64,000 bases of DNA, from the NCBI GenBank assembly GCA_004431415.1, contig QPMI01000685.1:1-64000 (forward strand), given 5' to 3'. How positions within the stretch are numbered: the stretch's first letter is position 1; every line of letters begins with the position of its first letter. The stretch is from Cyanophora paradoxa CCMP329 (taxonomy: Eukaryota > Plantae > Glaucophyta). Shown here piece after piece: positions 2,899-25,559 of the stretch. The notes beneath the pieces are model-generated. The model was not told where the DNA came from. It saw only the letters and a list, made by a program, of their open reading frames with translations, and did no database searches. The translations under genes were made by a program, and so were the position numbers.

Positions 2899-2901
2899 GA
2901 G

Positions 2902-4188: not shown

Positions 4189-4769
4189 ATAGCCAGAGAT
4201 GGTATAATGACTTTCAGACTACTAAGGAGTCATATACAGCCCCTAAACCTCAAAGAACACTAAGAGAAAGGACCAAAACTAGCTAGTTTGCTAGGCGAAA
4301 ACTCGTTTTTTCCAAATATATGTATGACTGATATACATATATGCATATGATATACACATTGTCTTGTAGATCTTTTCAAGCGCTTCACAGCGATATGCAG
4401 AACGTTGCGATTTGATAATCTGGTGATGAGATACAAGCGTTTGAAGATGCCGATTATCGATTTTTCGAGATTTCGGAATGATGCATCATAATGATGTAAT
4501 AATGATGTATCATAAACACATAACATATATATATCGCCGTGATCGTCATGATCTCCCGAGTTCGATGGTGTGTCATATATATCATATACATATGCATCGT
4601 CATTATGACATCATTTCGTAACATAACACGTCCGTCATCGTCTTTTTTCCGCAGCGAACAGATAAGTGAACAGTTAACGAGACAACTATTGTAATAGTGT
4701 ACTGCAACAACAATTGAAACAAGATATGCGGGAAAGCTATTGAAAGACAATGAAGCAAATTGCGAACAA

Positions 4770-4858
4770 TTAAGTGAACAGTTAAGTGGACACCTGTTGG
4801 GAGTAGGCAGTGTCTACTCGTTTATCGTGAAACGGTGTCCACTTAACTGTTCATTTAA
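4770..4858. repeat. Inverted repeat (25-bp arms, 1 mismatch) with a nested small hairpin
   Basis: TTAAGTGAACAGTTAAGTGGACACC (4770-4794) pairs with GGTGTCCACTTAACTGTTCATTTAA (4834-4858). Inner GAGTAGGCA/TGTCTACTC at 4801-4819. Confidence 0.9.
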
Positions 4859-5243
4859 CTGTTGACGAAAACCCATGCATTATGACATCATATCATTAAA
4901 CCACATACAAAACACTAAAATGCATGTATCTCTTCACCAACTCATCATGTGACAAAACCAAAAACAGATTCGGAATCCTCTTAACGAGGCCTGCCTGACG
5001 ATGTAAGTATCATAGGCTCAATAATTCATATGTTTATAAGCATCTCCCCTTGATTCCCCCTATTATATAATATTTATATTAAAGTGGACTCAAGGTTGAC
5101 TCATATTAATCGATAGTATATGGATTTTGTTACGAATTCAATGCAAGGGTTGACTAAGTGGGTTGAGTTGACTCAAATTTCACAGGAAATAACAATGAAT
5201 CAGAGTATAAAATGCATTTTTTGAATCAACTACACCAACTAAC

Positions 5244-5561
5244 ACTGAGATTTTCACAATATAAGAGGTCCTTACTGAATATGGTATGTGTCACAGGTGT
5301 CACAGGTTTATCCAAAGTTTCTCCTATAAAGAGTGAATTTTCAAAAGTTTGGGATGGACCTGTGACACCTGTGACACTCGATTAAATCATTTATTCATTT
5401 AATTAGAAATACATAGATAAGATTATTACTGAGTTTTTCATTATAAAAGAGATCCTTACTAAATATGGTATGTGTCACAGGTGTCACAGGTTTATCCAAA
5501 GTTTCTCCTATAAAGAGTGAATTTTCAAAAGTTTGGGATGGACCTGTGACACCTGTGACAC
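5244..5561. repeat. Two ~134-bp direct repeats (184-bp period), each containing a 20-bp-arm palindrome built from tandem GTGTCACAG 9-mers
   Basis: GTGTCACAGGTGTCACAGGT...ACCTGTGACACCTGTGACAC at 5288-5377 and 5472-5561. Confidence 0.95.
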
Positions 5562-5814
5562 CCAATTATTTCAAAAATCCTAAGGGTCCCCCCTTAGACT
5601 CAATAAAACAATGATAAAATCATATAAGTTTCATGTATAATTACGATTGGATTCAATAAGAGATCTATTTGTTTTATTAAACAAATGAATCATTTATGGA
5701 TCTTAATCGAGTTAAGCGATATATTTCCGATTAAATGAATTAAATTTAATTAAATTTAATCGAGAAAGTACATGAATATAATATCGATTAAATCAATTAA
5801 CTTTTAGACCAATC

Positions 5815-6097
5815 ACACATAGTAAAATGCGGAGTTTTAACCAGAGGCAAGATCTAATTGAGATTCAGTTATATTATCGGAAATATATACAGATTATCGA
5901 TAGACTCAGTAAGACTAATCGGAAAATAAGAGAAATTTACGATAAAATATCGAAAAGAATACAAAATAATCGAAATAAATGAATATTCGATAAGATATAC
6001 ACAGATTATCGATTGATTGAAATAGAATATACGAGATATATCAACAAAATCAATTAAGATTAAGCCGAGGGTTAAAACTCCGCATTTTACTATGTGT
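5815..6097. repeat. Terminal 283-bp segment bounded by a perfect 28-bp inverted repeat
   Basis: ACACATAGTAAAATGCGGAGTTTTAACC (5815-5842) and its reverse complement (6070-6097). The outer copy coincides with the AT/GC junction. Confidence 0.93.
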
Positions 6098-6099
6098 CG

Positions 6100-8231
6100 G
6101 GGCCGAGCGCTGGGCGGCTGGAGCTGGGGGGCCTGGCGCCGCTCCCTCAGTCGGGCGGGTTCCAGGAGATGCGCTCGGGGCAGAGCACGCCCTCCGACCT
6201 CTCCAGCGCAGCCTCCCTCGCCGTCCGCCCGCAACCCGCCCGCCCAGGCCCCTCTCAGGCCTCACGCGCCGTCCGGCGCAGGACGGCGAGTCGGGCTCGT
6301 GCTCGGGGGACGACGCGAGCCCGCGGCCGCGCGCCGGCGCGCTAGTAGTCGCCTCCGCCTCCACCGGAGGCGCCCTCGTCGCCCCCGGCTTCGACCCGAG
6401 GCGCGCCCGCCCCGCGCCGCCCGGCCGCCCGCCCCGTCCCGCCTGATGCGGGCTCCTGGTCCGCAGCCTCCACCCCTGGGCCCTTCCCGCGTTCTGCGTG
6501 CGCTCCCTTGGCTTTCCCCCCGCGCCGCGTCGCCTGACCGGGGCCCGACCGACCGGGGCGCGGGCCGGCAGACGGCGCCGGCCCCGGCGAGGACGACCTC
6601 TCCTGGATTTCGGCCGAGTGCGCCGCGCGGCCTCCGCCCCGCGGGAGAGCCGGCGCCGCTGACGCCGGAATGCGGCAGGGAGGCGCGCGGGCTCGTCGCG
6701 CGGTGCTCCACGCGGCCCCGCCGCTGCTCCTGCGGGCCTCGGAGGACGCCGAGGCGCGCCGCCTCCCCCCGGCCTCGCACCGTCCTCCCTCGCCCTCCTC
6801 ACGGCCCCGGCCGCGGCGGCGCAGCTGTGTGGCGCGTTCCGGCGGCTGGCGGAGCCGGCGGCGCTCCTCGCGTCGCGCGCCGCTGTCTGTGACCTCGTCG
6901 CCGTGCGCTCTGCCCCGCCCCGCCCGCCCCGCCCTCTGTGCCGGGGGCCCCGGGCTGAGGCGGGTGCGTGGGGCGCAGCTGCTGCTCGACCCGCGCCTCC
7001 TCGCCTCGTCCGTGTACGCCACCCTCGAGGGCCGCTGCGCCCTCCGCCGCGCCCTCGCCGCCCTCCGCGCCGCCGGCGCCGCCCCGCCGTGCGCCCGCCC
7101 CACCTCGCGCCCCTTGGCGACCGCCCCGCGCCGACCGGCGCCGGCCCCGCCAGGTGGGGGCGATCCTGGAGGCCGCCGTCGATGCCGTCTGCGCCCTAGA
7201 CCTCTCCGCCGCCTACGCCGACCCGTCCGCCCCAGCCCCGCCCTCTCACGCAGGCCGCCCTCGCGCCGACGCCAGCCGCTTGGCCGTTGCAGGGCTAACG
7301 CGACACTGATGCTCGACCGCTGCCACGGCCTCCTGCTCGCCGGTGCCCCCGCCGCGGCGGCCGCCCCGCCCCGCCCCGCGCGGCCTCACCGTCGCCGGCG
7401 CGCGCGGGGCAGGCACGTCGGAGGTGGCGCTGTGCCCGCCGGGCTGCGCCGCCCTCCCCTGGGCCTCCGCCAAGCGGGCGAGCCGCCCCCGCCCCGCCGG
7501 CCCCGCCGGCCGCGCCCGCGGGAGCTCGGGGCTGACGGGGGCGCGGGGGCGCGGGGGCAGCTGGTGGACTTTGGGGAGGCGGTGGCGGGACGTGGCGGGG
7601 GCGCGACCGCGTCCTCCACTGCCGCGCCCTCCACCGCCGCGCCCTCGCCCTCTTCCACGTCCGCCCCGCCCCGCCCCGCCCCGCGCCGCCCCGCGGACGC
7701 CGGGGCGCAGTTCGGCTTCGTGGAGGCCGCCCTCGAGCTCGCCTTCGAGTCCTGGAGCGGCGCGCCCGCCCGCCCCCGCCGCCGCCCCCGCCCCGCTGAG
7801 GGCCCCCGCCCGCAGAGCTGCTCCGCATCCAGCACACGCCCTCCCGCCTCGAGGCCGCCGTCCTCCGCGACCTCGTCGAGATGCACCGTGCGCGCCCCCT
7901 CCGCCCCGCCCGCCCTGCGGGCGGCGCCCGAGGGCGGGGCCTGGCAGTGGAGGCGGGGCGGGGCGGGGAGGCGGGGCGGGGCCTGGCGGAGCGGCTCTAC
8001 TACTTCCCGGGGGAGGTGGGGGCGCCCCCGAGGACGCCTTCCACGCCGCCCACGTTCTCCGCCTCCTCGGTCCGCCCCGCCCCCGCCCCACCCCGCCCCG
8101 CCCACTCCCACGCCTCACCGTCGCACTCGCGCACCCCGCCCGCCGCAGCCGCCGTCGGGGGCGCCGGCGCCGAGCTCGGCCACGGGCGCGCGTGCGGCAA
8201 GCGCCGGCGGCTCGAGCACGGCATCTGCTAG
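6100..8231 (+). CDS. Hypothetical multi-exon host protein, possibly 5'-truncated by the element
   Basis: Exon-like blocks between C-rich introns (LLLDPRLLASSVYATLEGR, VGAILEAAVDAVCALDL, FGFVEAALELAFESW, GLAERLYYFPGE). No family recognised and no clear start. Confidence 0.4.
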
Positions 8232-9180: not shown

Positions 9181-11147
9181 CTAGGGGGCGGGAGCGCGGG
9201 GGCCCGGGCGGGGGCCGGGGGCCGCGGGGAGGCGGCCGAGGGCCTGGCCGACGCGGAGGCGCTGGCCGGGGGCGAGGGCGAACTCGAAGTCGTGGGGGGC
9301 CTGGAAGACCAGCACGACGGTGGAGCCCATGTGGAAGACCACCAGCTCCTCCCCGCGCCCCGCCCCGACCCCCGGCCGGTACCGCCGCTCGTGCGCCGGG
9401 CCCCCGAACGGCGGCGGCGGGTACTCGGGGAGCAGGTCCCCCAGCTTCTTCACCCGGATCGTCTGCGGGGGGGTGCACGGGAGGGGGGGTCAACCCGGAC
9501 GGGGGTGGAGGATTCGCTGCGTGGGCCGGGGGAGTACGGGGTCGAAGGTGGCGGTGATGTGGCCGACGTCGAGCGACCCGACGGCGGCGAGCGCGATACC
9601 CCCGTACCGCCAGTCGCCGACCACCACGAGGCGCTCGTTCATCTGCGCGTTTCTCCGCATGTGAGGGGGTACCGCCTTCGAGCGAAAGGCGCGAGGGCAA
9701 ACCGCGAAGATGTGTGGTATGTAGCGCGAGAAGAAGGGGTGGAGGGGGAAGAGGTACCCTGCCGGCAGGGTGAGGGGGTACCCCGGGCGCCGGAAGGGGC
9801 GGGGCGGGAAGGCACCGGGGAAGTGCCTGGACTTGGTGATCTGCATGTCTGCGGGCGCGTGCACGCGGTGGTAGTCCCCCGGCCCCAGGAAAATTGTAAT
9901 AGAGTACCTGCCGCCGAGCACGTCAGCGAGCGGCGAGGGCGCAAGTGGGGGAGGGGGCGGAGGGGCGGGCCAGGGGAGGGTGTCGCCGGCCTCGCGGGCG
10001 CGGAGGCGCTCGATGCTGTCGGCGACGCCGCCGCCGAAGAGGGCCGAGCGCTGGTAGCTGAGGCCCTTGACCTGCTCAATCTGCCCCGCCCCGGCCCGGG
10101 GGCGAGGCTCGAGGGGGCGCGGGGGGCGGGGCCGGGGCCGGGGCCGGGGCCGGGGCCGGGGCGGCACCTCCTCGTCGTTGAGGGCGCGCCCGAAGTGCAT
10201 CACCTGCCCGTCCACCGGGCACACCTGCAGCCCGGCCGCCCGCCCGGCGTGGGCCGGGGGCGACGATGCGGGGGGCTGGGAGCGGCAGCACCAGCTCCTC
10301 GGGGGCGACGGGGCGGGCGCCGGGGCGCAGGGGCCGCGCGTAGAACTCGTTGATCGTCGCGAACGACTCCAGTGGCGCGGCGACCTCCGACAGGTCCGCC
10401 CCTGCCGCCCCGCGCCTCAGCGGCGCCCGCGCGGAGGAGGCGGGGACGGCGGGGGGCGCGGCGCGCCGAAGAGGGCTGCGAAGCCTCTGTAGAGGTGCGG
10501 GCGGAGGCTGCGCGGCACCTCCGTCGACGCCAGCCGGCCCCAGACCGCCCCGCCAGCCGCAGCGGCAGCAGGCTCAGCGCCTGGATCTGCGCGCCGCGAG
10601 GCCGCTGAGGCGCGCCGGGGCCGCGGCGGGGCGGGGCGGGGCGGGGCGCGCGGGCCTCCCACGGCTCGGGCATCGCCAGCATGCCCTTCTGCTTGGCCGC
10701 CTCGTCCTTGTACTCCCGGTACGCCACGTACGCCCCTGCCCGCCCGCCCGTCAGCGGTCGCCTTAAAAGTCGGCCGGCCGGGCGAGGCGCGGGCGCGCCC
10801 ACGCCGGCGACGACGGCGAGCCCGCCGGCGAGCGCCGCGCGCAGCAGCAGCCGGAAGAGGCGCCGCGCGGAGGAGTCCCCGGTCGGCGATGCCGTGCCGT
10901 GGTCGTCGCCGTCTGGTTCGTGCCTCGCCCGCCGGTGCTCCGACGTGCTGCTGCGTCCCGCCGAGCGCTCCGACGAGCTCCAGAAGGCTCGCAGTGATCG
11001 GCCTGCCGCCGCCGGTGCCGCGGCGGCCGGCTTCGGGATCCGGAGGGCTATGTCATGGCCACGACCAACGAGGACGGGCGGACGGAGGGCGGCGAGCGAC
11101 GACGCCCCGGCCCGGGCACGTGTACGCTGAATGCCGTACACGTACAT
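9181..11147 (-). CDS. PSD1: Phosphatidylserine decarboxylase proenzyme, probably mitochondrial (multi-exon)
   Basis: CPVDG, IEQVKG, IFLGPGDYHRVHAP, NERLV, AAVGSLDVGHI and the autocleavage motif FHMGSTVVLVF. Arg/Ser-rich N-terminus followed by a hydrophobic anchor. Confidence 0.92.
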
Positions 11148-11481
11148 GCCGCGCCCGGGACGTCGACGACCGTACCGGGCGGCTGCGGAGTCCCGGGTCC
11201 GCTGGGGGGTAGACCCAACTAGCGCAAATTTGATCCGGCCAGCTGCATGCATGCGCAGCTGCTTGCGCAGACAGAATTGATCGCATGCCGCGAGTGCACT
11301 TCTAGCGAGCAAGCAACGCATGCAATCGATAACTGCAGCTGACATACAATGACCGTGATTGCGTGAGCCTCAGCTACGACTGCGAGGCTCGGATGCGACT
11401 GGCGGTCCCCGGTCCGCTGGAGCGTCGCGCGCCCCGGCGGGGAGTCCCCCGCCACCGCCCGCCACACCGCCCGCCACGGGG

Positions 11482-12729
11482 TTACAGGAGGGACACCTCC
11501 GCGTCCGCCGCCGCCGCCTCGAACTGCGCGCCGCGTCAGCGTTCGCGGGGGGCGGGGCGGGGGTGCGGGGCGGGCCTCGAGGGCGTCGTCGGCCTCCTCG
11601 GCGCCGCGGCAGCCGCACAGGGCCACCTCCTCCGCCCCCTCCTCGCCGAACAGCGGCGCCTCCTCGTCAACCTGCGCCCACGGCGCCTGCGGGGCGAGCG
11701 CGCCGGCTCGGACCGGCGGCGGAGGGCGGGTCGCGAGGGCGGGGGGGGGGGGAGTCGACGCACGGGGCCCTGGGCGCCGAAGCCCGAGGCGCCGGCGGGG
11801 GCGGCCCCGTACTGAGGCGCTGGGGGTACCCGGCCCCCGGCGCGGCGGCGGGCGGCTTGGCGCCGTAGCCGGCGTTGGAGCCGCCGCCCATGAGGCTGTT
11901 GGCGGCGGTGCCGAGGAGGGCGGAGCCGAGGATGCCGGTGAGGCCGCCGCCGCTCGAGGGGCGCCGTAGCTCGAGTTGCCGCCGCCGCCGAAGAGGCCGC
12001 CGAGCATGCCGCCGGCGCCGCCGCCCGAGCCGCCGCCGAGGAGGCCCCCGAGGAAGGACGAGGCCGCCCCGCCCGTCGGGGCCTTGCCGCCGTAGCCGCC
12101 CTGGGGCGCGTAGCCGCCCTGGGCCCCGCCGTAGCCGCCCATGCCGCCGTAGCCGGGGGCCGGGGTGCCGCCGCCCATGAGGCCGCCGAGGACGCTGGCA
12201 CCCATGGAGCCGAGGAGGCTCTGGCCGGCGCCGCCGGCGGCGCTGCCGCCCATCATGCTGCTCATCGCCCCGCCCAGCAGCGCCGAGCCGAGCATGCCCC
12301 CGAGGCTCGGGCCGCCGCCGCCCTGCGGCGCCCCGTAGCCGCCGCTGCCGTAGCTCTGGCCGCCCCCGAACATGTTCCCCATGAACTGCCCCGCCCGCCG
12401 CCCCGGGTCAGGGCCGGGGCTCGAGCGGGCCGGGCGCGGCACGCGGGAGGGCGCGCCTTGGACGCGGTGCCGCTGATGATGTCCGAGAAGCCGCCACCGC
12501 CGCCGCCCATGAACTGTCGAGCGTCCGGCCGTCAGCGGGGTCGCTCGAAGGCTAGGAGGCGGGCCGGGGTGGCCCACGTTGCGAACGGCGGCGTCCGCCT
12601 TGTCGGTCGGCACGTCCCACGCTTGCTGCGCTCGGATTGAATCAGCCCAGACGCGGTGCGGTGGCTGCAACCGTGCCGCGTGCACGCCTCGAGCGAGTGG
12701 TCCTCATCGCTGCCGTCGACGTCCGTCAT
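11482..12729 (-). CDS. Gly/Met-rich protein with acidic CGC C-terminal module (family member 1)
   Basis: Spliced by eye: MTDVDGSDEDHSLE|QAWDVPTDKADAAVRN|FMGGGGGGFSDIISGTASK|FMGNMFGGG... ending VDEEAPLFGEEGAEEVALCGCRGAEEADDALE|FEAAAADAEVSLL*. Confidence 0.75.
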
Positions 12730-13387
12730 GGTGAACTGCCGCCCCCGCGTGAGACTCGTTCGCCGATTTGAGCTCTAAAGGCTTCTAAAAAGGGGGGAAG
12801 AGGCGCCGCTGGAGCGGGCTGCGGCGGAGACGAGTCATTCGCGGTGCGTGCGTTACTTCCGATACGACCGATTCAGTCGCCGCTGCCGGCCCCGAAGCGC
12901 GCCAATGCTACCGCAATAAGTTAGGCATATATATCGAACCTGTTACGAAGGCCGAACGTTAACTTCGGAACCCGGGATCCCGATTGCAGTCGTGCAAGGG
13001 GGGTACGTAAGGTCAGTCGTAAGGTCAGCTGCAGTGCGCACATGTACATGCAGCTGCAGGTTGCAAGCAGCGCCACCGTCGCACGTGTACCAACCCTCTA
13101 GCTATACTATGCTAGGCCGCAAATGCTCGAGCTAAGCTTAAGCCTACAAGGCTACCGGCCTAGTACGCCTCGAGGACAGCAACTCCAATGCCGCAGTACT
13201 AGTGCGCCCATATGCATGCAATCAAAAAGAGCTAGCGCTCGGGCGTAGAGTCGCCGTAGACGTCCCGGGCTGCCGGGCTGCCTGAGGCACGAATTTGAAC
13301 GAATTCGAACGAGTCGATTGATTTGCATAAAATAGAATTAATTTAGATTCGCCGCAGAAGGGCAGTGCGACCGGCGGCCGCGGCTCT

Positions 13388-14199
13388 CTACAGAAGGGCG
13401 AGGTCGATCTCCTCAGAGACGTCAGCCTGTGCGACGCGTCAGGGCCGGCCACGGGGGGCGGGGGCGGCGGGGCGGGGGTGCGGGGCGGGCCTCGAAAACG
13501 TCGTCGGCCTCCTCGGCTCCGCGGCAGCCGCAGAGGGCGATCACCTCCGCTCCCTCCTCGCCGAACAGGCCGACCTCCTGGTCCAGCTGCGGGCCCCCGA
13601 GGCGGCGATCGGGTCAGCTCGCGCCCCCGAGCCCCCTCGCGGCGGGTGCCGGGGGTCGCCCACCTCGGCGACGACGTTGGCCGCGCCCTGAATGGCGCCC
13701 CCGGCGGCCTGCGGCGCGGCGCGGCGTGAGCGGCCCGGGCGGGGCGGGGCGGGGCGGCGGCGGGGCGCGCCGAGTTGAGCGACTGGGTCATCGCGTTCAG
13801 CTTCTGGCCCACGAACTGCAGCGCGCGCCGAGGGGGCGTCCCCGGATCAGAGGTGCGGGGCGCCGGCGGCCGGGGCCCCGGCCCCGGGGCGGGCCCGGCG
13901 GGGCGGCGCACGGCGGAGGCCTTGTTGGCGAGGGTCTGGCCCAGGTTCACGTCGCGGCCCTGGATCACGTTCGTGGCGACCTGCCCGGCCCGGAGCCCGT
14001 GAGCGCCGCGCGCTGACGTGCGCGTGCGCGCCGGCGGAGCCGGGGCTCGCGGTGGCCCGCTGCGCGCAGTCACCTCCGAAATCGTCGACTTGAGCGACTG
14101 AGGCAGCAGATCGAACTGCGGGGTGACGGGCGGTCACAATCGGAGGGAGGCCAGGCTGCAATTGAAGAGAGCGGGAGGGGGGGGGCGCACGAGGCCCAT
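13388..14199 (-). CDS. Small amphipathic protein with acidic CGC C-terminal module (family member 2)
   Basis: MGL|FDLLPQSLKSTISE|VATNVIQGRDVNLGQTLANKASA|FVGQKLNAMTQSLNS...LDQEVGLFGEEGAEVIALCGCRGAEEADDVFE|ADVSEEIDLALL*. Start context CAGTTCACCATG is the same as member 1. Confidence 0.78.
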
Positions 14200-14903
14200 G
14201 GTGAACTGTCGAACTGAGGGAGGCGGAACACCTGTGTGGAATCCGACGGTTACAACCCGGCGCGGCGGGGAAAGACGATCTAGTCAATGATACGAGCTTT
14301 GATGTGCCGGCGGAAGCTCAAAAGACGGTGACTGTCCGCTGCAGCTGGCTGCGTGCCCGAATGCAACGCCAACCGCGAGCTTACGTACGGGCGCGCACCC
14401 CCGCGTTCTGATTACCAATAAACCACTGATATTAAAGCTCGTAATCGTTTCTAGAGAAAACGGAAACGGCCAGAAACCATGGGCGTGCAACGGCGAAAGC
14501 CGTCGACGGCACAGGCCTAGGAGAGCGCATGCCCCGGGCCCTCGTGATCCCGCGGCGGCCGTCCTAGAGCAACGTGCTCACCGGAGAAGCTGCTCAGCGG
14601 TTCTGGTAGGGGTACGACGTCGAAGCTGTTGAAACCTCCTTTTCTCTGCGCAGCTAGCGCTGCGCACGCGTACGCGGATGCGCGCCGCTCCGGATCCGAG
14701 GCTCCCAGCTTGCAATTGCAGCTCCATAGCAGCACGCGCCGGCGCCGGCGCCAACGTGCGCGCGCATGAATGGGCCGGCATGCGCAGGCCTCGCTAGCGC
14801 TGTAAATATTTCGAATTCCCGTGCTTGACATCCGCATCGATGCATATGAGCACTCTTAAAGCTTTGACAAGGGTCACGAGGCCGGCGCGCGCGCGGGCTA
14901 GCG

Positions 14904-17900
14904 CTAGTGGCCGCGGCGGGACTCGCCGGTGCTGAAGGGGAAGCGCGCGCCGTCGACGGCGAGCTGCAGGGCGCCCATCCTCTCCGCCACCAGCCGCGTG
15001 CCCCCGCGCCCCTCCGGGTCCCTGTTCTCGTCCCCGTACCCCTCCCCCGCGTCCTCCTCCAGCTCGGCCCCCTCCCCCCCGGGGGGCGCCGGCTTGGCCC
15101 AGGCCGGCTTGGGCCCCTTCCCGCGGCCGCCGCCCCGGCCGGCGGCGGGGCGGGCGCGCGGGGCCGACGCGGGGCGGACGGGCGGGCGAGGCGGGTCGTC
15201 GCTGGGCCGGTCGCTCACGAGGAGCGTCTCGTGGCCGCCGGCCTCCTTGCCGGCCTCGTCCCCCGAGCGGGCCGCCACCTCCGCCGCCGCTGCGCGCTTC
15301 GCCTTCTCGCGCATCGCGCGCGCCGCGAGGAAGGCCGCCCGCCGGCTCGTCGGGTCCCCCGTCGCGAACTTCGGCGCCTTCGCCCCCGGCCGCACCACCG
15401 CGTCTGGAGCACCGGCCCGTAAACGGAGGGGAGGGTACAAGGAAGGGGGGCTGCGGACCGTCCGGGTTGTAGGCCGGGCCCGGGCCGTTCTGCGGGGCGG
15501 CGGGGGTCGGCGGGCGGGGTACAGAGCGTTGCAGTGCAGGGGGACGCGGGCGGACGTTCGGAGCGAGGAGGCCGTACTCCCTCGCGAGGCCGGAGAAGCG
15601 GTCCTCCCGGCCCATGCGCTCGTTCTTCAGGAGGCGGTCCGCTGGCGCCCGCCGCCGCTCCGGCTGCACCCGGAACGCCCCGTCCTGCCGCGCGCGCCGT
15701 CGGCTCGAATCCGGCTGGGACCGGCGCCCGGCCCCGCGCGGCGCACCGGACGCGCGTACATCGGCCCCGGGCTCGGGTTGTTGCGGATCTGCGCTCGATT
15801 CAGAGAGGGGGGGGAAGGGGGAGGGGTACGGCACGGTGTGGTAGAGCCACTGGAGGCGCTCGTCCTCGGGCTGGAGGAGCTCCCGCCGGCGCTCCCCGCC
15901 CCGCGGCGTCGCCCCGCCCCCGTCCCCGGCCCCGCGCCCCCAGCGTCGCCACCCGCGGCAGCGGCCGCGGCCCTGCCCGCCCCTCCTCAGCGGAGTGGAC
16001 GGTGCGGGCGGGGAGGGAGGGCGGAGGGGCACCGGGGGCCTGCGGGGCGTGCCGGTGCTGCTGCTTCCGCCGTCGCCGCGCCCGCGCCCGCGCCCGCGCG
16101 GGGAGCGGGAGCGCGGGGAGCCCTGGCGGGAGAGCGGGAGCGCGGGGAGCCGGCGCGCGGGATCCCTGGCGCGGGGAGCGCTGCCGGGGCGAGCTCTTCC
16201 GCCGCGTCCGCCACGCCCGCGCCGGCGCCGTCCGGTTGCTGCCGCCGTACGCGCTCGGGTCGTGGAACCTGCGGCGCGCGCCCCCGCCTCAGAGGGCGCG
16301 GCGCGGCGGGGTAGGGGAGGGGAGGTCCCGCACGGGTCGTGGTAGCCCGGCGCGGTCCGCCCCGTGGACCCCCCGCGGCCCGTCCGCGCGGTCGTCTCCC
16401 CTCCACTGAGCGCGGCGTGAGCGACGGGCACCCGCCGCCGCCCCGCGCCCGCCCCCGCCCGCTCGCGCACCCCTCTCCCTCGTCCACCCAGGCCCGCCCC
16501 ACCTGGTGGCTGCCCGCACCAGTCGGCGCGCGGCGGGGCGGGCGCGGCGGGGCACAGGCGCGGGCGCAGACGCACATCCAGTGCAGGGGCTGCATCATCG
16601 GGTCTGTCGCGTGCGGCCTGCGGCGGCGGCGGCGGCGGCGGCTCGGGGCGGGGCGACGGGGGCGCGTGCGGCGAGGAGGGGTGCGGGATCGCACGGGAGC
16701 CCGTCACGGTGCGAGTTCGAGGACGAGTAGGCCTGCCGGTAAGGGCGTCGGGCGCCGGCCTCGCAGCGAGTGCCGGCGGGCGGGCGGGCGGGCCCGGCGC
16801 GCACGGAGGCGGTCACGTCCTCGTGCTCGTGCCCGGGGGCGGCGTTGGGGTCAACCCCTGCGCGCCGGTGAGGCGCGGCGGCCGGGGGGCCCGCCGGGGG
16901 GGGGGGGGGTACGCGGGCGGACGGGAGAGGAGGACTGTGGCGGAGAGGGCGCCGAGGGCGTACTCCTCCTCGTCCGCCCGCGTGAAGGCCGCCAGGCGGA
17001 ACGGGCGCGTGCGGTCCAGGTCCACCGGCACCTGTACCCCCGGAATCGGGCGCCGAACGGGCAGCGGGTGCACCGAAAAGATGGCCGCACCTCGGTGTAC
17101 CCCAGCGTGGGGACGCCGGCCGCGAAAGCCTGCAGGGGATTCAATGGTACCGAAGAGCGAAGATCGAAGAGTAGTGGAGTACCCCAACTCGAGCTAGCCC
17201 GGAGACTCTAACGTCGTCCGAGAGCCAAATCTCGATCTGGAATTTCTCCGGGACGCCGTCGTTGTAGCCTGCTCGGCGGTGGGCGGCGGGTCGCCCTGGG
17301 CGGGGCGGCAGGGGCGGAGCACCGTCCATGGGCTGGTAGGTGGAGAAGTCCTCGACGTCCACGAGCTCGTCGCCAGAGACGTGGGCGGAGTAGACCCAGC
17401 CGAGGACGCCGTTGAAGGTCCCGCCCCGCTGGAAGCCGATGAACTCGTTCCCGTCCGTCACGCCCACGATGAGCGAGTTCAGGTCGCGCAGGTTCAGCGC
17501 CCCCTCCACGGTGATCAAGAACCCCGTGACGCCCACCGCGGGGACCGCTGCCCGGCCGGCGCTCAGCGGGCCACGGGGCGCGAAGCGGGGCCACCGAGCG
17601 CACGGCCGAGCGGAATGTCAAGGACCAGCTCGTGGCGGACGCGCTCGGACGCGTAGCGGCCGCCCTGCGCCGGCGGCGGAGGCGACCGCTCGGCGAACCA
17701 CAGGATGCGGTCGCGGCGATCCGGAAGGAGGCCGGCAAGGCGGCGGTCGTTGACCCAGACGCTGCGCGCGAGGCGGGTGAGGGGCGACGGGGCCGGTGGC
17801 GGGGACAGCTCAAGAGCTCACTCCTCGCGTCTGTATGCAGCGACCTCCGCCGCGTCGCATCGCACGTCGCAGACGCGCTCGTATTCGGATTCTAAGTACA
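14904..17900 (-). CDS. Hypothetical protein with SHIPPO/ODF3-like PGP motifs (may be two genes; start uncertain)
   Basis: PSPGPMY and NGPGPAYNP motifs near the C-terminus. A globular-looking exon upstream (GFLITVEGALNL...FQIEIWLSDD). Splice signals appear to link the two parts at ~16.8 kb. Confidence 0.45.
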
Positions 17901-18568
17901 TCGTGTGATCCTTCATTGCGCAGACTCGCTCGCCGCTCGAACTATCCGCCGGGCAATGCCAGGGCGGAGGAGTCCCTACAGCTGGCCCGCAACTGATCTC
18001 GCACTGCTGTGAGCTGCTGCGCAGGCGGCGCACTGCTCAAGCCAGACCGCTTTGACGCGTTTGGAAGACCCGGAGGTCGCGGACGCGGCCGGTCGATCTA
18101 GATAGCCGAAAGATACGCGAGACACGCTTCGAGACCCTCGGCAGCAGGCTGGGTCTCGCGTTCTGCTTTTTCAAACGCGGGGGGTACGGTGCCTTAAAGG
18201 GGCGGGCGTACCCCCCTCTCAGTGCTCGGGGCCGATCACGACAAGGTGCGGCAACACCGCCGGGTAGCAGGAGAGCCGCAGCGCGCCGTATTGGCTTTGT
18301 AGACGCCTGAGGGACAGCTCTAGAGCCGCGGCTTCCGCCTTCCGATCGCCGGATCGCTGTGGCACGCTTCGGCCGCCTGCGCTAGCTGGACTGTGTCCTG
18401 TCGGTCCCTTCGTTAGCGCGTCTCTAGCTGAGGCTCTGCCGATTCGCACATCGCCCCCTGAGGCCGCCCGATCACCCGCTTCGCTCTAGGGCGCCCACAA
18501 TCCAACAGCCAGTGCACTGTGACATCGTGCGAGGGCTATTGCTCACACTCTCATCGGTCTGTACGCAG

Positions 18569-19038
18569 ATGCCGAAGGAGATCAAGGACATCAAGGTTCG
18601 CGCTTGCCGACGTGCTGCGCTCTCGCCAGCACGGGCCGCGAAGCTTAGGAGCCGGACCCTAGACTGTTCTCTGGCGAGGATGTGTCCTGACTGTGATGCG
18701 CAGGACTTCCTCCTGACGGCGCGCCGCAAGGACGCCAAGTGTACGCACATCGCTCGCGCCGGCCGCCTATGCAGCGCGCGGAGGCCATCGCTAACGCTGC
18801 GCAGCGGTCAAGATCAAGAAGACCAATGGCGTGACCAAGTTCAAGGTCCGCTGCAGCCGGTACCTCTACACCCTCCGCGTCACGGACTCCGAGAAGGCCG
18901 ACAAGCTGAAGCAGTCCCTTCCCCCGGGTGCGCTCGATCCTGCCGGAACATGCACGTTTCTCGTCCTTCCTCCTAAACCTAGCTAACTCGTTTCCCACCC
19001 TTTTTCACCACACAGGTCTCGCGGTCAAGGACATCTAA
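18569..19038 (+). CDS. RPL38: 60S ribosomal protein L38 (eL38), 4 coding exons
   Basis: MPKEIKDIK|[12 protein letters not shown]|[41 protein letters not shown]|GLAVKDI*. Confidence 0.98.
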
Positions 19039-20197
19039 GCGCGCTGCTAGCCCCTCTCATGCATCGGCCCACGAGAGCCGGTCAAGATGCCTCAGCTCAC
19101 AGATAGCGTGCCTCCCCGGCGCGGGCTGTGCCTGCTCTGAAGCATCGAAGCTGGTTTGCTCACATTCCTGCATCTGCCATATGGCCAGCGGCGTGGTAGA
19201 CGGAAAGAAGCGAGCGCTAGCGGGATATCGATCTTGGTCGCTGGGCATGATCTTTAAGCTAACGAGCCCAGGCAGGCGTGAGCCTCCTCGCGGAACTAGA
19301 GCATTAACCCTGATTCTTCAACACTGCAATTGCCAGACGAAGCATGCAATTAAAACACGCACGCCTCCTTTTCCTTACTACATTATTCCTTCGAAATGCA
19401 CGCAATGAAGGAAAGACGTCAACGACACCTTCCTCGGGTGCATGCGAGAAAGGAAAGGAAAGAACATGCTGCGGCGAATTCACTTCCTAAAGAGCACTAC
19501 GTATAAGGGGCATATCTAAATCGCGCTACCAGTGAATGAAAGCCGGCGCTATGTTCCGTCGTCTGGGCGGAGGGAGTCAGGGCCAAAGCGCACAGAGTGG
19601 GTGGCGCGTCGCACCACGTACCATCCCCGTTGGGCAGAGCTGTTGCTAGAACGCTCGATGCCATCGAAACTATCGCGCGAACGATTGTCCTGCGGCGAGT
19701 CGGCGTGAGGGTTCCTTGCGCGGAGAACAGGGCGGAGGCTTGCGGCGCTAGCTATGGACCTTGCGTTCGCGTTATCGCCTGTCTCTCCCCCACGAGAGCC
19801 GCCCCCGCTCCATGCGGACGCCGTTGCCATCAACGGAGAGGCGCTGGCGGCCGGGACCAGGGCCGCTGTGGAGCGCTGGCGGACGGCGAGCGCCGACGGA
19901 CCGGCACCGTGCCGTGCGGGAGATGCTACTGTTGCGACTGCGCGAGATCGTTCAGGCGGCTTCTTCGCAGCGCAACAGGCCGCGCGGACGGCACAGGTCA
20001 TAGTCGAAGCTCACCCGCAACGGCGGAGCCTGTTGTTATCGATCTTGACGCTGTCCTGTGCGCGGAAGCATGCGCTGCGGCCCTCAGGCCTGCCCGCACG
20101 GCCGATCTCAACATCTTTGCTTTGGCCCTCTACCCCTAAACCAAGTTGCACTGTTGCAGTGTTGCACCAACTGGGCGCCGGGCGGGCGCCGCGGAGG

Positions 20198-22310
20198 ATG
20201 GAGCTGCTCGGGGAGTCGAGCTGGCTCGCTGGGGAATCAGACGACCTCGGTCTCCTCGATTTTCAGCTCGCCGATGCCGCGTTCGACTCCCCGGCCGCGT
20301 CCGAAGAGGGCCACGAGCTCGCGTCGATCTCCAACGAGGACGGAGCGACATGGCTCCTGACCATCAAGGAATCCAACGGCCCAAGCGCTCTCGATGATCC
20401 CGTCGCGGTCGTCGCAGACGACTCCTTCGTGCTGCAGCCCGGAGACGATGGGCCGCCAGCGCCGTCTCAAACCGGCTGGGGCCGTTTCACCGGCCCCGAT
20501 CCTGGCGAGAGTGCGCCTCGCTTTTTCCCGGCGCACTCGCTCGCGCACTTGTTTGAGCGCTGCGGCAGACGAGGACGACTACATCATGCGGGTCGCCCGC
20601 GAGCTGGCCCCCAAAGTCTACCTGCACAGCAGGGAGGCGAGCGAGCGCGGGCGCTCACCAACCGATCCCTCCCTTCTGACTTACCGGAGCGCAGGAGTTC
20701 TTCCCCTCTTCCGTGGAGCACTTCCTGAAGCACACGTACTTGGACAAGGGCGACGGCCGCCGCGTCGTGCGCCCCCCTGCCCGTCCTCCCCTCTCCTTCT
20801 GATCGTGCCCCCGCAGGACGCCGAGCGCGCGCTGTTGAAGGAGGGCTACAGCGGCAAGGGCTCCCTCGTGACCCTGGAGGGCCTCGGCTGCCACAGCTGC
20901 TACAAGCCCCATTTCTTGAAGGGCCAGGTGAGCGCTAGCCCGGGGGTACATCGTGAGGTCAGCTAGCACGTCAGGGGTGCGCGCCGGTGAAGAGACAACT
21001 TTATTTTGCACGTCAGTCAGAGCGGCCCCTCGGGCCCCTGTTGACCACCTTCGTTCCAATGCTCGAGGCCGCGTCCGAGTGATTCTAGTTGTACTATGTG
21101 CGACGGCGTGATGAGATATCTTATTTGCACGTCAGTCTGCGCCCTTCGGGGCTCTGATGATCGAAAAGATACCGTTCCAATTGCTGATCCCGTCGCTCTC
21201 CCGCCCCTCCCCCTTTCGGGCGCCGCATCCCCGCCCCGCCCCTCACCGCCCCCGCGCAGAGCCTGGAGGAGGCGCCGGCGTACGCGATCATAACGAAGAA
21301 GGGCGATGTCACGGGTGCGCCAGCAGCCGCCCCACCCCGCCCCCCGCCCCTCTGAGCGCCTCCGATTCTCTCCTACGGCAGACATTTCCTACCAGTTCTT
21401 CTACCCCTTCAACTACGGCAAGAACTTCTGCATCGGCGCCAAGCTCTGGGGCCGCTGTATAGGCGGCAAGCAGGTCGGCACCGGCGCGCGCCCCGCGCAT
21501 CGAGTCCCGGGCCGAATCTTTCGCCGCAGCTCTTCGGCAACCACGTGGGCGATTGGGAGCACGTGGTGCGCCCCCCCCCCCCCCCCCCCCCCCCATCCCG
21601 CCCGGCGTCGGCCCTCGTTTTTGACGCCTCGGGCCGGCCCCGCGCAGACTCTGCGGCTGGTGCGGGGGGTGCCGGACTCGATGTACGTGGGGGCGCACAA
21701 CTTCGGCGGGGTCGTCCACGAGCCCCAGGTTCGGACCCCGCTGGGCCCCGTTCTCCTCCCCGCCTCGTGCCGAGCGGGCGCGCAGCTGCGGTTCGAGGAG
21801 GGCCACCCCGTCGTGTACAGCGCCCGCGGGAGCCACGGCTCCTGGGCCACCCCGGGGTGCCCCGCCCCCCGCCCCCCGCCCCGCCCGGCGCGCCTCACCT
21901 TGGGGGCGTGCAGGGAGCACGTGTACAAGAAGATTTTCAACGGGGAGCGCCTGGTGGACGAGGCGGACGCGGGGAAGGCCTGGCGGACCTGGGAGAACCT
22001 CCAGGCCCGCCCCGCGCGCCCCGCCGCCCCGGCACCCGCTCCCGCCGAGCCGGGCGGGTGCGCAGATCATCAAGAACGGGGGCGCGCAGCGCGAGCACCC
22101 GTGGCTCCATTTCAAGGGCGAGTGGGGCAACCCGGCGAGCGGCTGCCTGCCCTTCTCCCAGAAGGCGCGCCGGCCCCGGCCCCGGGCCCCCGCCCGCCCC
22201 GAGCCCTCGCCCCTGACGCCTGCCTCGCGCAGCTGGGGATCCCGTGCGTGAACACGGGCGGGCCGGCGGGGCCCCTGCGCGACGACCTCCTCCTCCCCGA
22301 GCTCAGGTAG
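20198..22310 (+). CDS. Vps62-domain-like protein (start may be further upstream)
   Basis: ELAPKVYLHSRE.FFPSSVEHFL, YQFFYPFNYG, GNHVGDWEHV, PVVYSARGSHG, FKGEWGN and GPAGP motifs. Confidence 0.85.
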
Positions 22311-22756
22311 CCGGGGGCCGCCCCGGCCCCCGCCCCGCCCCCGCCCCGCGTCCCCGGCCGCGGCCCTTTCTTCCACTCCTCTGTGCAATTATGTTGTACT
22401 CATGGAGCTATTGTCTTATTATTCTAGTTAGGCTGCATTGCCTTATTATTCTAGTTAGGCTGCCGCAGCGGCGCGTGTACGTAGTACTCGAGGATTTCAT
22501 GTACAGTGCTATGTTGAGATTAAGATGCAGGATTTCCGATGATCCCGGGGCCCGCATGCTCGAGCTCGCGTGCGGGGCTCGAGAGAAACGCTTCGAAAAA
22601 TTCAAATTTACGTAGTGCTTTACAAGGTGTACAGAACTACGTATACACAAGGCGCAGATCGATGCCGGACGGCCGGGCGCCGGGCACGGACTGGCACGCG
22701 CGCAGGCATGGCACATGTACAGGCGGGCGGGACCGGAGGCCGCGCGGGCGTCAGAT

Positions 22757-23529
22757 CTAGAGAGTCTCGATCTCGTCGAAGGACTGCTCGGCGGAGACCT
22801 GCTCGCGGTGGGCCGTGGGGCGCGCGGGGTGAGCGCTCAAGATCAGGCGGGGGCGGAGGGGGCGGCGCACCTCGAAGACCTCCTGGTCGTCGGCCTCGGC
22901 GCGCCCGCAGCCGCAGAACGAGAGCTCCTCCTGCGCGCCCCGCCGGCCGCCGCTCAGATTGGGCGGGGCCTGCCGGGCAGGATCGATATCGAAGTATCGT
23001 CGGACCTGGTTGGACTCGGAGAAGGTGACGCGGCCGGTGATCTCAACCGCCTCCTCATCCTCCTCCTCCTCCGGGCTCTGATCCTCCTCCTCCTCCTCTC
23101 CCTCGTCCGCGACGGTCTCGTCCTCCTCCTCCTCCTCGTCGGACTTCAGCTTATCCAGAGCCGCCTGCGCCTTCTGCGCTCGCCCAAGGACACGGGTAAG
23201 ATGTCTTTCTGCGTTCCGTGTGCAGAGGAGCCGACGGAGATCGAAATCCGCGGCCGAATAATCGCAGGATACTATGGAAAGTGCCAGTGCTTTTTCGGGC
23301 CGGGTCGCGGGCGGGCGACCCCGGCCCCCCGGAACAGAGCGCAGCGCGTAGTCACCGTTGCGAGATTGTCGAGAGACTGGGCCGCGGCAGAAACTTGATC
23401 GAGGAACTGCGCGGGCGGCGGTTGGCCTCCGAAGATCATCGGATAAGACTCGGAGGTACGGTTGCACAAAGCTGCCCGGCGTGGGCAGCCTCAAGCTAGT
23501 CGGGACTCGGGAAAGGAACGCACGCCCAT
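22757..23529 (-). CDS. Small acidic protein with CGC C-terminal module (family member 3)
   Basis: MG|FLDQVSAAAQSLDNLAT|KAQAALDKLKSDEEEEED...EELSFCGCGRAEADDQEVFE|...SFDEIETL*. Confidence 0.68.
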
Positions 23530-23647
23530 GTTTGAACGGTAAAAGTTGCGGGAGGTGAAGATAGAAACAACGGACTAACGGTTGCTCGATGCTTTTTGCC
23601 CAGCGCTCGGGGTACAGCCTTCTATACCTGAGCGCTGCTTCCGGCCC
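23530..23647. promoter_or_regulatory. Putative bidirectional promoter
   Basis: Only ~118 bp of lower-GC DNA separates the divergent ATGs of CGC member 3 and HAT1. Confidence 0.45.
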
Positions 23648-25559
23648 ATGGCGGAGGGCCCCGAGGGCGACGGCGAGGTACCGCAGGCGGCACAGTGCAT
23701 CTCGATCCGGCTAGTGGGCACGGAGCGCGATCTGGACGTCAACACGGCAGGAAAGCGTGCGACGACCTGGACACCGAAGTGCGTCCGTGCACGCGAGCGG
23801 ATCCGCAACTGCAATGCGGCGCACGCTCAGGCGTGCTGCGGCCGGGCGGCGTGCCGCCGGGCTGGCCGCATCGAATTCGAATTCCGGCGCAGGTTCGTGC
23901 ACCAGCTTGTGGGCGAGGGCGAGCGGTTCGAAGGCTACGAGGGCCTGCGCGTGGAACTCCTCTTCGACGCGAACGCGCGTCTGTACCTCTCCGCGCGCTA
24001 CGAGTCGCGGGCGGCGGGGGCGCGGCCGGCCGACGTCGCGGCGGCCTTCGCGGAGCACCTCCCGCTCGGCTTCGAGCGCTCGCGCGACGAGTTCTCCAGG
24101 GCGCGTCCTCTCCCGCCCCGCCCTTCGCCCCGCGCGGCCGACGGGACGGGCCCGGGGCGCGCAGCGGGCGGCGGAGCCGTGGGCGCCGGTGGGCGCCAAG
24201 CAGCACGAGTACGAGCTGCCGGGCGGGGAGCGCTTCGAGGTGTGGAAGGCGGAGACGCTGCTGGCGGGGCCGGGCCGCGCCCTCGCGCAGCGGCTCCAGC
24301 TGCTCGGCCTCCTTCTCATCGAGAGCTGGTCCCACCTCGAGCTCGACGACGACCGCTGGAGCCTCTTCCTCCTGTGCCCGCCTTCACCCGCCCGCCCCGA
24401 GCTCTGCGAGCTGAGCCGGCGTCCGCAGAGTCAACCGCGGCGGGCGGAGCAGCGGCGGGGGGGTAGCCCCGGGGCCCGGACCCGACTACATCGCAGGCGA
24501 GCGTACCCCCCTTCGATTCCTCGCGTACCCCCCTCCGAGCCTCCATCACCCGCAGGCTTTGCGACGGCGTACAAGTTCTTCGCGTACCCCGACAGCTGGA
24601 AGCTTCGCGTGAGGTCTGCCGTACCCCCGTCCCTCCGGATGTACCCGGCCCGCCGAATTCCATCGCCGCAGCCAAGTCGTGGTCCTCCCGCCTTTCCAGA
24701 GGGAAGGGCACGGCGGTGCGCGGGTGGTGGCCATCCGACCGCGTACCCCCCATCCGCACCGACGTACCACCCTCCCCCGCAGGCCGGCTCCTGCAGTGCA
24801 TGTACGACGACGCGAGGGCCCTCCAGGTGCCCCCCTTTTCCTTCGATCGCGTACCCCGCCGACCGGGGTACAGCACTCGGAGGTGGTGGTGGAGGACCCT
24901 TGCCCCGAGTTCCAGCGGGTGCGCGACCGCGTCGACCTCCGCAACGTCCTCGGGGACGACGACGGGGTACGCCGCGCTCTCCCGGCGGGCCCGTCCTCGG
25001 AGCCTTACGAGCGGGGGGCGGCCAGCGCGCGTTCTTCCCCGAGGAGGGGCCCGAGCGGCTGGAGGAGGGGGCGGCCGCCCGCCTGCGCGAGGAGCTCCTC
25101 CTCACGCGGGTGCGGCCCAGGCCACCCCCCCCCCCCCTCCTTCGCTCCCTTCCGAGCCCCCCGACGCTGCCCCCCCCGGCGGTCGCGCAGAAGCAGGCGG
25201 TGCGGGTGTTCGAGATGGTGCGGCTGCGGCGGACCAACCTCGCCGACCCCGACGCCTACAAGAGGCCCCGCCCCGCCCCGCCCCCTCCTCCCTCGCCGGC
25301 TCGCCCTGCTGAGGCGCGCCGCAGGTACAGGCTGCTGGTGAAGCGGCGGCTCGACGCGGAGACGCGCGCCACCGTCGCCGGCGGGCCCGCCATGGGGTGC
25401 ACCCTCCCCCGCCTCCTCTCACACCCCGCCTCCCTCCGACGCGCCGCCGGGGCCCGGGGCAGGGGGGAGGAGCGGAAGGCGCTGCTGGAGGGGCTGTACC
25501 GGGAGCTGGAGGGGGAGTACAGGGCCGTGCTCGCCTCCCTGGACAAGGCGCGCAGGTAG
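23648..25559 (+). CDS. HAT1: Histone acetyltransferase type B catalytic subunit
   Basis: FVHQLVGEGERFEGYEGL, LLIESWSHLELDDDRW, GFATAYKFFAYPD..KLRVSQVVVLPPFQREGHG and EVVVEDPCPEFQRVRD. Confidence 0.95.

What the first reader, a model, noticed from the sequence alone, without database searches (positions are those of the whole stretch)
11482..23529. Unrecognised three-gene family: variable amphipathic cores on a conserved acidic 'CGC' tail
Seen: genes at 11482-12729, 13388-14199 and 22757-23529 have very different bodies (Gly/Met-rich, short helical, poly-Glu). Their ends are related: EEVALCGCRGAEEADDALE, EVIALCGCRGAEEADDVFE and EELSFCGCGRAEADDQEVFE. All three have an intron right after that Glu and a last acidic exon ending in Leu (AEVSLL, IDLALL, EIETL). 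Members 1 and 2 share CAGTTCACCATG and an intron at ASK|FMG / ASA|FVG. Members 2 and 3 begin MGLFD / MGFLD from a micro-exon. Inference: a constant tail on diversifying cores suggests a sorting, lipidation, metal-binding or follower/pro-peptide module on membrane-active peptides or organelle (e.g. extrusome or cell-cover) cargo. No signal peptide is evident.
Basis: partly seen in the sequence, partly recalled or inferred. Interest (0 to 1): 0.8.

Follow-up and report, generated by a model that had tools for sequence, protein, structure and literature searches.

The report
Orphan algal proteins sharing acidic tail
Three neighbouring genes of the alga Cyanophora paradoxa encode small proteins with unlike bodies but one shared acidic tail holding a Cys-Gly-Cys motif; they are real, have no detectable relatives elsewhere, and probably sit on membranes inside the cell, but their job is untested.

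Summary
The window is Cyanophora paradoxa contig tig00021719. Genes 2 and 3 equal public models g23149 and g23155 (114 and 108 aa). RNA-type contigs confirm splicing of genes 1 and 2 and show that gene 1 (about 307 aa) has two one-base frameshifts in the window, probably assembly errors. The tails are homologous (gene 2 vs 3: 0 of 20,000 shuffles) and hold the only two cysteines of each protein. A profile search of 1.84 billion proteins found no relative outside this species. Pfam, NCBIfam, PDB and fold searches were blank. One borderline hit to a mycobacteriophage family failed follow-up. Best reading (inferred, 0.4): cytosolic, largely disordered proteins with an N-terminal amphipathic helix for lipid surfaces and a shared tail that docks on a common partner and is probably S-acylated at Cys-Gly-Cys. 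The main rival is a metal or redox site. Secreted or extrusome cargo, epiplastin, hydrophilin, CaaX, myristoylation and pro-peptide readings failed their sequence tests. This is an undescribed species-level orphan family of unknown function. The scan had not noted it on other DNA.

The parts
11482..12729 (-). Gene 1 coding span, about 307 aa: acidic N-terminus, short amphipathic helix, Gly/Met/Leu-rich body, CGC tail. Exons 12729-12688, 12625-12578, 12513-12457, 12385-11764, 11686-11576, 11523-11482
   Evidence: Splice joints in RNA-type contigs X1, X3, X12; exon model
11821..11822 (-). One-base frameshift of gene 1 in the window sequence, probably an assembly error
   Evidence: Extra G in contigs of X1 and X3 (table 4); lies at a G run
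11957..11958 (-). Second one-base frameshift of gene 1 in the window sequence
   Evidence: Extra G in contigs of X1 and X3; lies at a G run
11576..11686 (-). Gene 1 tail exon (37 codons, phase-0 introns on both sides) with the CGC motif
12736..12939 (-). 5'-UTR intron of gene 1 (204 nt, GT..AG); its acceptor is the CAG of CAGTTCACCATG
   Evidence: Inferred from the pieces of X12 record 6; ends checked
13388..14199 (-). Gene 2 coding span, 114 aa = tig00021719_g23149. Exons 14199-14191, 14115-14074, 13980-13912, 13815-13771, 13708-13664, 13586-13491, 13426-13388
13491..13586 (-). Gene 2 tail exon (32 codons) with the CGC motif
13301..13387 (-). Gene 2 3' UTR, ending at a poly(A) site at 13301
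   Evidence: Adapter-plus-T loose end in X12 (table 7)
14232..14581 (-). 5'-UTR intron of gene 2 (350 nt, GT..AG); upstream non-coding exon at about 14582-14617
   Evidence: The X12 loose end maps to 14583; no upstream ATG
22757..23529 (-). Gene 3 coding span, 108 aa = tig00021719_g23155: amphipathic helix 3-34, poly-Glu tract, CGC tail. Exons 23529-23524, 23406-23356, 23173-23006, 22930-22871, 22798-22757
   Evidence: Model equals P0003; helix; not read-checked
22871..22930 (-). Gene 3 CGC exon (20 codons); the first part of the shared tail lies in the preceding exon, across the 75-nt intron 22931-23005

Best explanation
A small, locally duplicated, Cyanophora-restricted family of cytosolic, largely disordered peripheral-membrane proteins. 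SHOWN: three genes (two confirmed spliced by reads) share a 40-42 residue tail of net charge about -10 with the invariant pattern F-x-E-x3-E-x3-[LF]-C-G-C..G..EADD..[LF]E, which holds the only two cysteines of each protein; each protein has an N-terminal amphipathic helix and no transmembrane or signal segment. INFERRED: the neutral amphipathic helix binds a lipid surface reversibly (endomembrane, alveolar sac or lipid droplet). This gives a DHHC acyltransferase access to the Cys-Gly-Cys, whose acylation fixes the anchor, while the conserved Phe/Glu/EADD positions form a short linear motif read by one common partner. The bodies (long helix, Gly-rich low-complexity, poly-Glu) are free to vary as spacers or assembly domains. 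In outline it works like synuclein, Hsp12 or complexin-type helix-plus-acidic-tail proteins, without being homologous to them.
For: Amphipathic periodicity at 92-102 degrees: gene 3 p 0.0014, gene 2 p 0.03-0.04, gene 1 p 0.05. AlphaFold: gene 3 helix 3-34 at pLDDT 82-88, remainder unstructured; gene 2 helical at pLDDT about 70. No hydrophobic segment long enough for a signal peptide or membrane span. Hydrophobic residues directly precede CGC in all three. Tail dN/dS about 0.26-0.33 between genes 1 and 2, on 32 codons. About 11 positions are invariant besides the cysteines' immediate context, more than an acylation site alone needs.
Against: No localisation or modification data. Three or four acidic residues lie within 5 positions of CGC against one basic; from general knowledge this is unfavourable for approach to an anionic cytosolic leaflet. 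Structure models are single-sequence and low confidence (pTM 0.40, 0.30). The gene 1 helix is short and only marginally significant. The three tail sequences come from one locus, and genes 1 and 2 share 30 identical bases across the exon end, so part of the conservation may be recent copying.
Confidence: 0.4

Rival explanations
1. The tail is a thiol/carboxylate metal site (Cu, Zn or an inter-chain Fe-S bridge) or a redox switch. Cys-Gly-Cys forms a strained disulfide, so the proteins would dimerise, bind metal or release from membranes according to redox state.
For: The only two Cys are a CXC pair among invariant Glu/Asp. A Cys-Gly-Cys peptide has a disulfide potential of -0.167 V and PDI-like activity (bioRxiv 10.64898/2026.01.27.701630). 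The best weak library hit is a CxC..HxxxE phage family.
Against: Two Cys and no conserved His; Cys fraction under 2%, unlike metallothioneins. No fold match. From general knowledge, acidic flanks raise thiol pKa and so lower catalytic reactivity.
Confidence: 0.25
2. The N-terminal parts are targeting or pro-sequences (for example cyanelle transit peptides) that are cut off, and the roughly 45-residue tail is the mature product.
For: A variable N-terminus with a conserved C-terminus is the usual precursor pattern. Genes 2 and 3 have Phe in the first 10 residues, and gene 2's tail starts near residue 66, close to the 63-residue median of cyanelle transit peptides (PMC4510345).
Against: Three acidic residues in the first 30 of genes 2 and 3, nine in gene 1, which has no early Phe; poly-Glu in gene 3; no dibasic site. 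None of the peptide strings is in the held supplements of the cyanelle N-terminome paper (older gene models, so a weak test).
Confidence: 0.08
3. Secreted or extrusome (mucocyst) cargo, membrane-active peptides, or epiplast plate proteins, with the tail as sorting or follower module.
For: C. paradoxa has mucocysts, alveoli and an epiplast (PMC6704402; PMC6212826). Gene 2 ends in an acidic DxxLL and gene 1 in ExxLL.
Against: No signal peptide-like stretch. One acid-base dyad per protein, V+I 3-13% and G+A 16-45%, against epiplastin V+I 33% with near exclusion of G and A. Absent from that paper's sequence supplements. Helices not cationic. Dileucine missing in gene 3.
Confidence: 0.07
4. The tail is a decayed relative of a small phage CxC/His zinc-binding module (PHROG 647/14412, mycobacteriophage Cornie gp82 type), acquired laterally.
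For: The gene 2 tail hits phrog_647 at E 0.0011, with 18 of 38 identities to Cornie gp82 and 18.3 bits against a 59-sequence family profile.
Against: The family's invariant His, Trp and second His are absent. Genes 1 and 3 score only 5.2 and 7.4 bits (p 0.08 and 0.03 when CGC is held fixed). Profile-profile probability 8-11%. tblastn E 6-7 in the phage collection. The hit was picked from several libraries and queries, and no such protein appeared in the 1.84-billion search.
Confidence: 0.05
5. The shared tail reflects recent exon duplication or gene conversion among young, weakly constrained orphan genes, and has no specific function.
For: 30 identical bases across the exon end and the most similar intron pair among 205 intron-like stretches. 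All 15 coding introns are phase 0, which eases exon shuffling. No relatives outside the species.
Against: dN/dS about 0.3. Gene 3 keeps the motif with a different intron layout and an unrelated body. The same intron start occurs on other DNA contigs, so it is partly generic (X15 records 10 and 11). Genes 1 and 2 are cleanly spliced, and gene 2 is polyadenylated.
Confidence: 0.12

Closest known systems
Synuclein / yeast Hsp12 / complexin-type proteins (analogy from general knowledge)
   Same: Small, no signal peptide, N-terminal amphipathic helix followed by an acidic disordered tail; genes 2 and 3 fit best.
   Different: No sequence similarity (Pfam blank). No KTKEGV-type repeats seen. Helix neutral rather than Lys-rich. 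Conserved internal CGC, whereas alpha-synuclein has no Cys (PMC11843170). No CaaX.
Hydrophilins / LEA proteins
   Same: Low complexity, Gly-rich (gene 1) or highly charged (gene 3), with helix-forming segments.
   Different: The definition needs Gly above 6% and hydrophilicity above 1.0 (PMC11277543); no member meets both. No dehydrin K-segment, no LEA Pfam hit.
Epiplastins (alveolins, articulins) of glaucophytes
   Same: Same organism; head-body-tail layout.
   Different: No acid-base-dyad, V/I-rich medial domain; not among the published Cyanophora sequences held.
Cys-Gly-Cys / CXC redox motifs (synthetic PDI mimics; Erv2 tail from memory)
   Same: Identical tripeptide in a predicted flexible tail.
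   Different: No ER signal or retention motif, no FAD or thioredoxin domain; activity untested.
PHROG 647/14412 mycobacteriophage proteins; Pfam DUF6506
   Same: Short local similarity around the CxC to the gene 2 tail only (E 0.001; E 0.03).
   Different: Invariant His and Trp absent; genes 1 and 3 do not hit; DUF6506 score 15 bits against a cut-off of 27.

Membership tests
Epiplastins | Medial domain of many acid-base dyads flanked by V/I | tested here: not met
   One dyad per protein, no VxV; criteria
Epiplastins | V+I about 33%, near exclusion of G and A | tested here: not met
   Whole-protein V+I 3-13%, G+A 16-45%
Hydrophilins/LEA | Gly above 6% and hydrophilicity index above 1.0 | tested here: not met
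   GRAVY 0.03, 0.21, -0.92; Gly 30, 11, 5%
Hydrophilins/LEA | Induction by osmotic stress or water loss | not testable with these tools
   Expression tables are not held for the stress papers
Synuclein-like | Family profile match or KTKEGV 11-mer repeats | tested here: not met
   No Pfam hit; no such repeat visible in P0002 or P0003
Synuclein-like | N-terminal amphipathic helix plus acidic disordered tail (architecture) | tested here: met
   clearest for gene 3, marginal for gene 1
S-acylated peripheral membrane proteins | Cytosol-exposed Cys near a membrane-binding element | tested here: inconclusive
   Hydrophobic residues precede CGC, but flanks are acidic
S-acylated peripheral membrane proteins | Thioester-linked fatty acid on Cys | not testable with these tools
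   Needs acyl-RAC or ABE
Prenylated proteins (CaaX, Rab CXC) | Cys motif at the extreme C-terminus | tested here: not met
   CGC lies 23-25 residues from the end; patterns fail
N-myristoylated proteins | PROSITE PS00008 pattern after Met-Gly | tested here: not met
   No match in any member (pattern recalled from memory)
Secreted peptide precursors / extrusome cargo | N-terminal signal peptide | tested here: not met
   Maximum 19-residue hydropathy 1.19, 0.81, 0.42; no dedicated predictor was run
Secreted peptide precursors / extrusome cargo | Dibasic processing site | tested here: not met
   None
Cyanelle-targeted precursors | Phe in the first 10 residues | tested here: inconclusive
   Present in genes 2 and 3, absent in gene 1
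Cyanelle-targeted precursors | Presequence poor in acidic residues | tested here: not met
   9, 3 and 3 acidic residues in the first 30; the criterion is stated for Chloroplastida, with similar architecture reported for cyanelles
Acidic-cluster dileucine (DxxLL) sorting signal | DxxLL near the C-terminus | tested here: inconclusive
   Met in gene 2 only; ExxLL in gene 1; none in gene 3
Metallothioneins | Cys-rich, multiple CxC/CC clusters | tested here: not met
   2 Cys per protein, under 2%
PHROG 647/14412 phage family | Invariant H..CxCGW..HxAxE | tested here: not met
   His and Trp absent; HH probability 11%
Pfam DUF6506 | Score above the gathering cut-off of 27 bits | tested here: not met
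   12-15 bits, gene 2 only

The most novel reading that the evidence does not exclude
The 40-residue CGC tail is a new portable targeting or redox/metal-switch module, moved as a phase-0 exon cassette onto unrelated amphipathic and low-complexity bodies, that addresses proteins to a glaucophyte-specific membrane such as the alveolar sacs or the cyanelle surface.
Probability: 0.15. Interest if true: 0.7.

Novelty: new variant of a known kind. Interest (0 to 1): 0.36.

Why it matters
Glaucophyte cell biology outside the plastid is nearly uncharted, and no targeting signal for its alveoli or other cytosol-facing membranes turned up in the papers searched. If the tail is a portable address or switch, it gives a short, easily tested tag. 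If not, the result is a corrected gene model (gene 1 is broken in the public assembly) and one more orphan family. Species-restricted families with a conserved motif on low-complexity bodies are common in protist genomes, which limits the surprise.

Tried and rejected
Blank or chance results: Pfam, NCBIfam and PHROGs scans; PDB sequence search; Foldseek PDB, none at E 0.001 or below; Atlas shape search, only unrelated generic helical bundles; Atlas feature search; three word searches, which returned only P0001-P0003; profile search of 1.84 billion representatives, only P0002, P0003 and P0004. P0004 is a Lys-rich tandem-repeat protein matching 13 profile positions and was rejected. Metagenome, viral and prokaryote genome scans found nothing. 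No fourth member in the window. Literature and supplement searches for motif strings and gene ids found nothing relevant. The phage family lead was followed with a 59-sequence profile and rejected. FFAT, LIR (gene 3 only), PTS1, KDEL, CaaX and myristoylation patterns are not shared. A CP12-like AWD tripeptide in gene 1 exon 2 was dismissed by eye: no VEE and no Cys pairs. An intron-phase control on RPL38 failed through wrong coordinates and is not used. As the operators required, gene 1 was searched exon by exon by reference and the joined protein was not sent to any search; for composition only it was joined in scripts with X at the two frameshifts.
Full report
Source. The region is about 70% GC with short GT-AG and GC-AG introns. 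Word searches returned only EukProt entries of Cyanophora paradoxa: tig00021719_g23149 (P0002, 114 aa), tig00021717_g23145 (P0001, 127 aa) and tig00021719_g23155 (P0003, 108 aa). My exon models of genes 2 and 3, built before these were fetched, translate exactly to P0002 and P0003. The window is therefore contig tig00021719 of the PacBio assembly (PMC6704402; mean intron 86 bp, gene models said to need curation).

Observation. Contigs of three RNA-type runs from three studies skip the predicted introns of genes 1 and 2, while run X15 covers the region without these joints and behaves as DNA. An adapter-plus-T end at 13301 fixes gene 2's strand and poly(A) site. Both genes have a 5'-UTR intron and no upstream ATG. 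Gene 1 is frameshifted twice in the window; contigs of two studies carry one more G at each place, both in G runs. With these, gene 1 is about 307 aa. The DNA-like run does not cover the two places with long pieces, so assembly error is likely but not proven. Gene 1's tail was not found in the protein collections, which fits a broken public model. Gene 3 rests on the public model and canonical splice sites, not on reads.

Is the tail more than chance? Genes 1 and 2 are 75% identical over the tail exon. Gene 2 against gene 3 gives 43% over 35 residues (E 7e-5), and none of 20,000 composition-preserving shuffles reached the score. A profile of genes 1 and 2 alone ranks gene 3's unspliced frame next in the window, at E 0.067, and no fourth member appears. 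Invariant positions are F, E, E, C, G, C, G, E, A, D, D, E. The two cysteines are the only ones in each protein. Tail dN/dS between genes 1 and 2 is 0.26-0.33 on 32 codons, suggestive of purifying selection. These two genes also share 30 identical bases across the exon end, so recent copying contributes, although the same intron start occurs on other DNA contigs. The N-terminal halves are not significantly alike. All 15 coding introns are phase 0; no genome baseline was measured.

Anatomy. Each protein has an N-terminal amphipathic segment: gene 3 residues 2-30 (p 0.0014), gene 2 residues 2-23 and 27-72 (p 0.04 and 0.03), gene 1 residues 38-56 (p 0.05). These helices are near neutral. AlphaFold on single sequences gives gene 3 a confident helix 3-34 and a disordered remainder, and gene 2 a low-confidence helical hairpin. 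Gene 1 continues as 30% Gly with repeated LGGLLG-type units; gene 3 has a poly-Glu tract. No segment is hydrophobic enough for a signal peptide or membrane span. The tails carry a net charge of -10 to -11, and CGC lies 23-25 residues from the end.

Relatives. Because the claim rests on absence, I ran the large profile search with the three-tail alignment: of 1.84 billion representatives only P0002, P0003 and an unrelated repeat protein passed E 0.001. Scans of metagenome, viral and prokaryote contigs, Pfam, NCBIfam, PDB and Atlas searches were blank. A 49-column profile from three sequences needs about 35 bits to pass, so relatives more distant than gene 3, or ones missing from the collection, would not be seen. 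I could not confirm how well other glaucophytes are represented. Restriction to C. paradoxa is therefore a statement about detection. The one borderline lead, phrog_647 at E 0.0011 for gene 2's tail, traced to mycobacteriophage proteins with an H..CxCGW..H pattern. Gene 2 scores 18 bits on a 59-sequence profile, genes 1 and 3 only 5 and 7, the His and Trp positions are lost, and profile-profile probability is 11%. I treat it as chance.

Mechanism. Shown: expression of genes 1 and 2, architecture, a conserved tail, absence of secretory signals. Inferred: cytosolic location; reversible lipid binding by the helix; S-acylation of CGC, favoured by the hydrophobic residues before it but disfavoured by acidic flanks; and a common binding partner for the conserved acidic and aromatic positions. 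I put this at 0.4. A metal or redox role is the main rival (0.25): Cys-Gly-Cys has a PDI-like disulfide potential of -0.167 V (bioRxiv 10.64898/2026.01.27.701630). Near-neutral exon copying (0.12), a cleaved presequence with the tail as product (0.08), secreted or epiplast cargo (0.07) and phage origin (0.05) are less likely, for the reasons listed under rivals.

Comparison and novelty. It works in outline like synuclein or Hsp12-type helix-plus-acidic-tail proteins (analogy from general knowledge), but it fails membership of these, of hydrophilins, epiplastins, metallothioneins, and prenylated and myristoylated classes. No paper or held supplement mentions the genes or motifs. The scan's own notes list only this same stretch.

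Limits. Contig depth is not used as an expression measure.

Noticed in passing
P0001 (tig00021717_g23145), outside the window: A second copy of gene 2 on another contig, identical wherever the models align but mis-modelled through an intron; either a redundant contig or a very recent duplicate.
   Followed up: partly
window 11309-12804 vs 13301-14232: Contig depth favours gene 1 in runs X1 and X3 (177 and 146 vs 34 and 39) but gene 2 in X12 (4.5-7.5 vs 454). The tool warns that depth cannot rank genes; this is only a lead to differential regulation or library bias.
   Followed up: no
window 23356-23406 and 22757-22798: Gene 3's second exon and last exon resemble each other (VSA..QS.D...T), p about 0.01 in a shuffle test; possibly an old internal repeat.
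   Followed up: partly
window 11482-14199, 22757-23529: All 15 coding introns of the three genes are phase 0, with mixed GT and GC donors; no genome-wide baseline was measured.
   Followed up: partly
window 12807-12969, 13019-13231, 13190-13341: Low-depth RNA-type contigs lie in gene 1's 5'-UTR intron and between genes 2 and 1: intron retention, read-through or DNA carry-over.
   Followed up: no
window 9493-10224 (-): Phosphatidylserine decarboxylase gene next to gene 1 (Pfam PF02666, E 1e-15).
   Followed up: partly
window 23582-24463 (+): Histone acetyltransferase HAT1 gene head-to-head with gene 3, starting about 100 bases from its ATG (Pfam PF10394, E 1e-9); possible shared promoter.
   Followed up: partly
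window 18569-19039 (+): Ribosomal protein L38 gene with three introns, recognised by eye.
   Followed up: no
window 19754-22300 (+): Multi-exon gene with Vps62/NPP1-like motifs by eye; unspliced frames gave no Pfam hit. It may be g23154, whose best published hit is a Branchiostoma hypothetical protein.
   Followed up: partly
window 1-6100: 34-40% GC block with a sharp boundary to the 70-80% GC host DNA; earlier scan notes call it a Polinton-like element.
   Followed up: no
window about 22415-22465: A direct repeat of about 20 AT-rich bases, two copies, in the intergenic stretch below gene 3, seen by eye.
   Followed up: no
L001:632-991 and L002-L077: A widespread mycobacteriophage hypothetical family (Cornie gp82; phrog_647/14412; 465 phage records) has an invariant H..CxCGW..HxAxE pattern that looks like an unannotated zinc-binding module.
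   Followed up: partly
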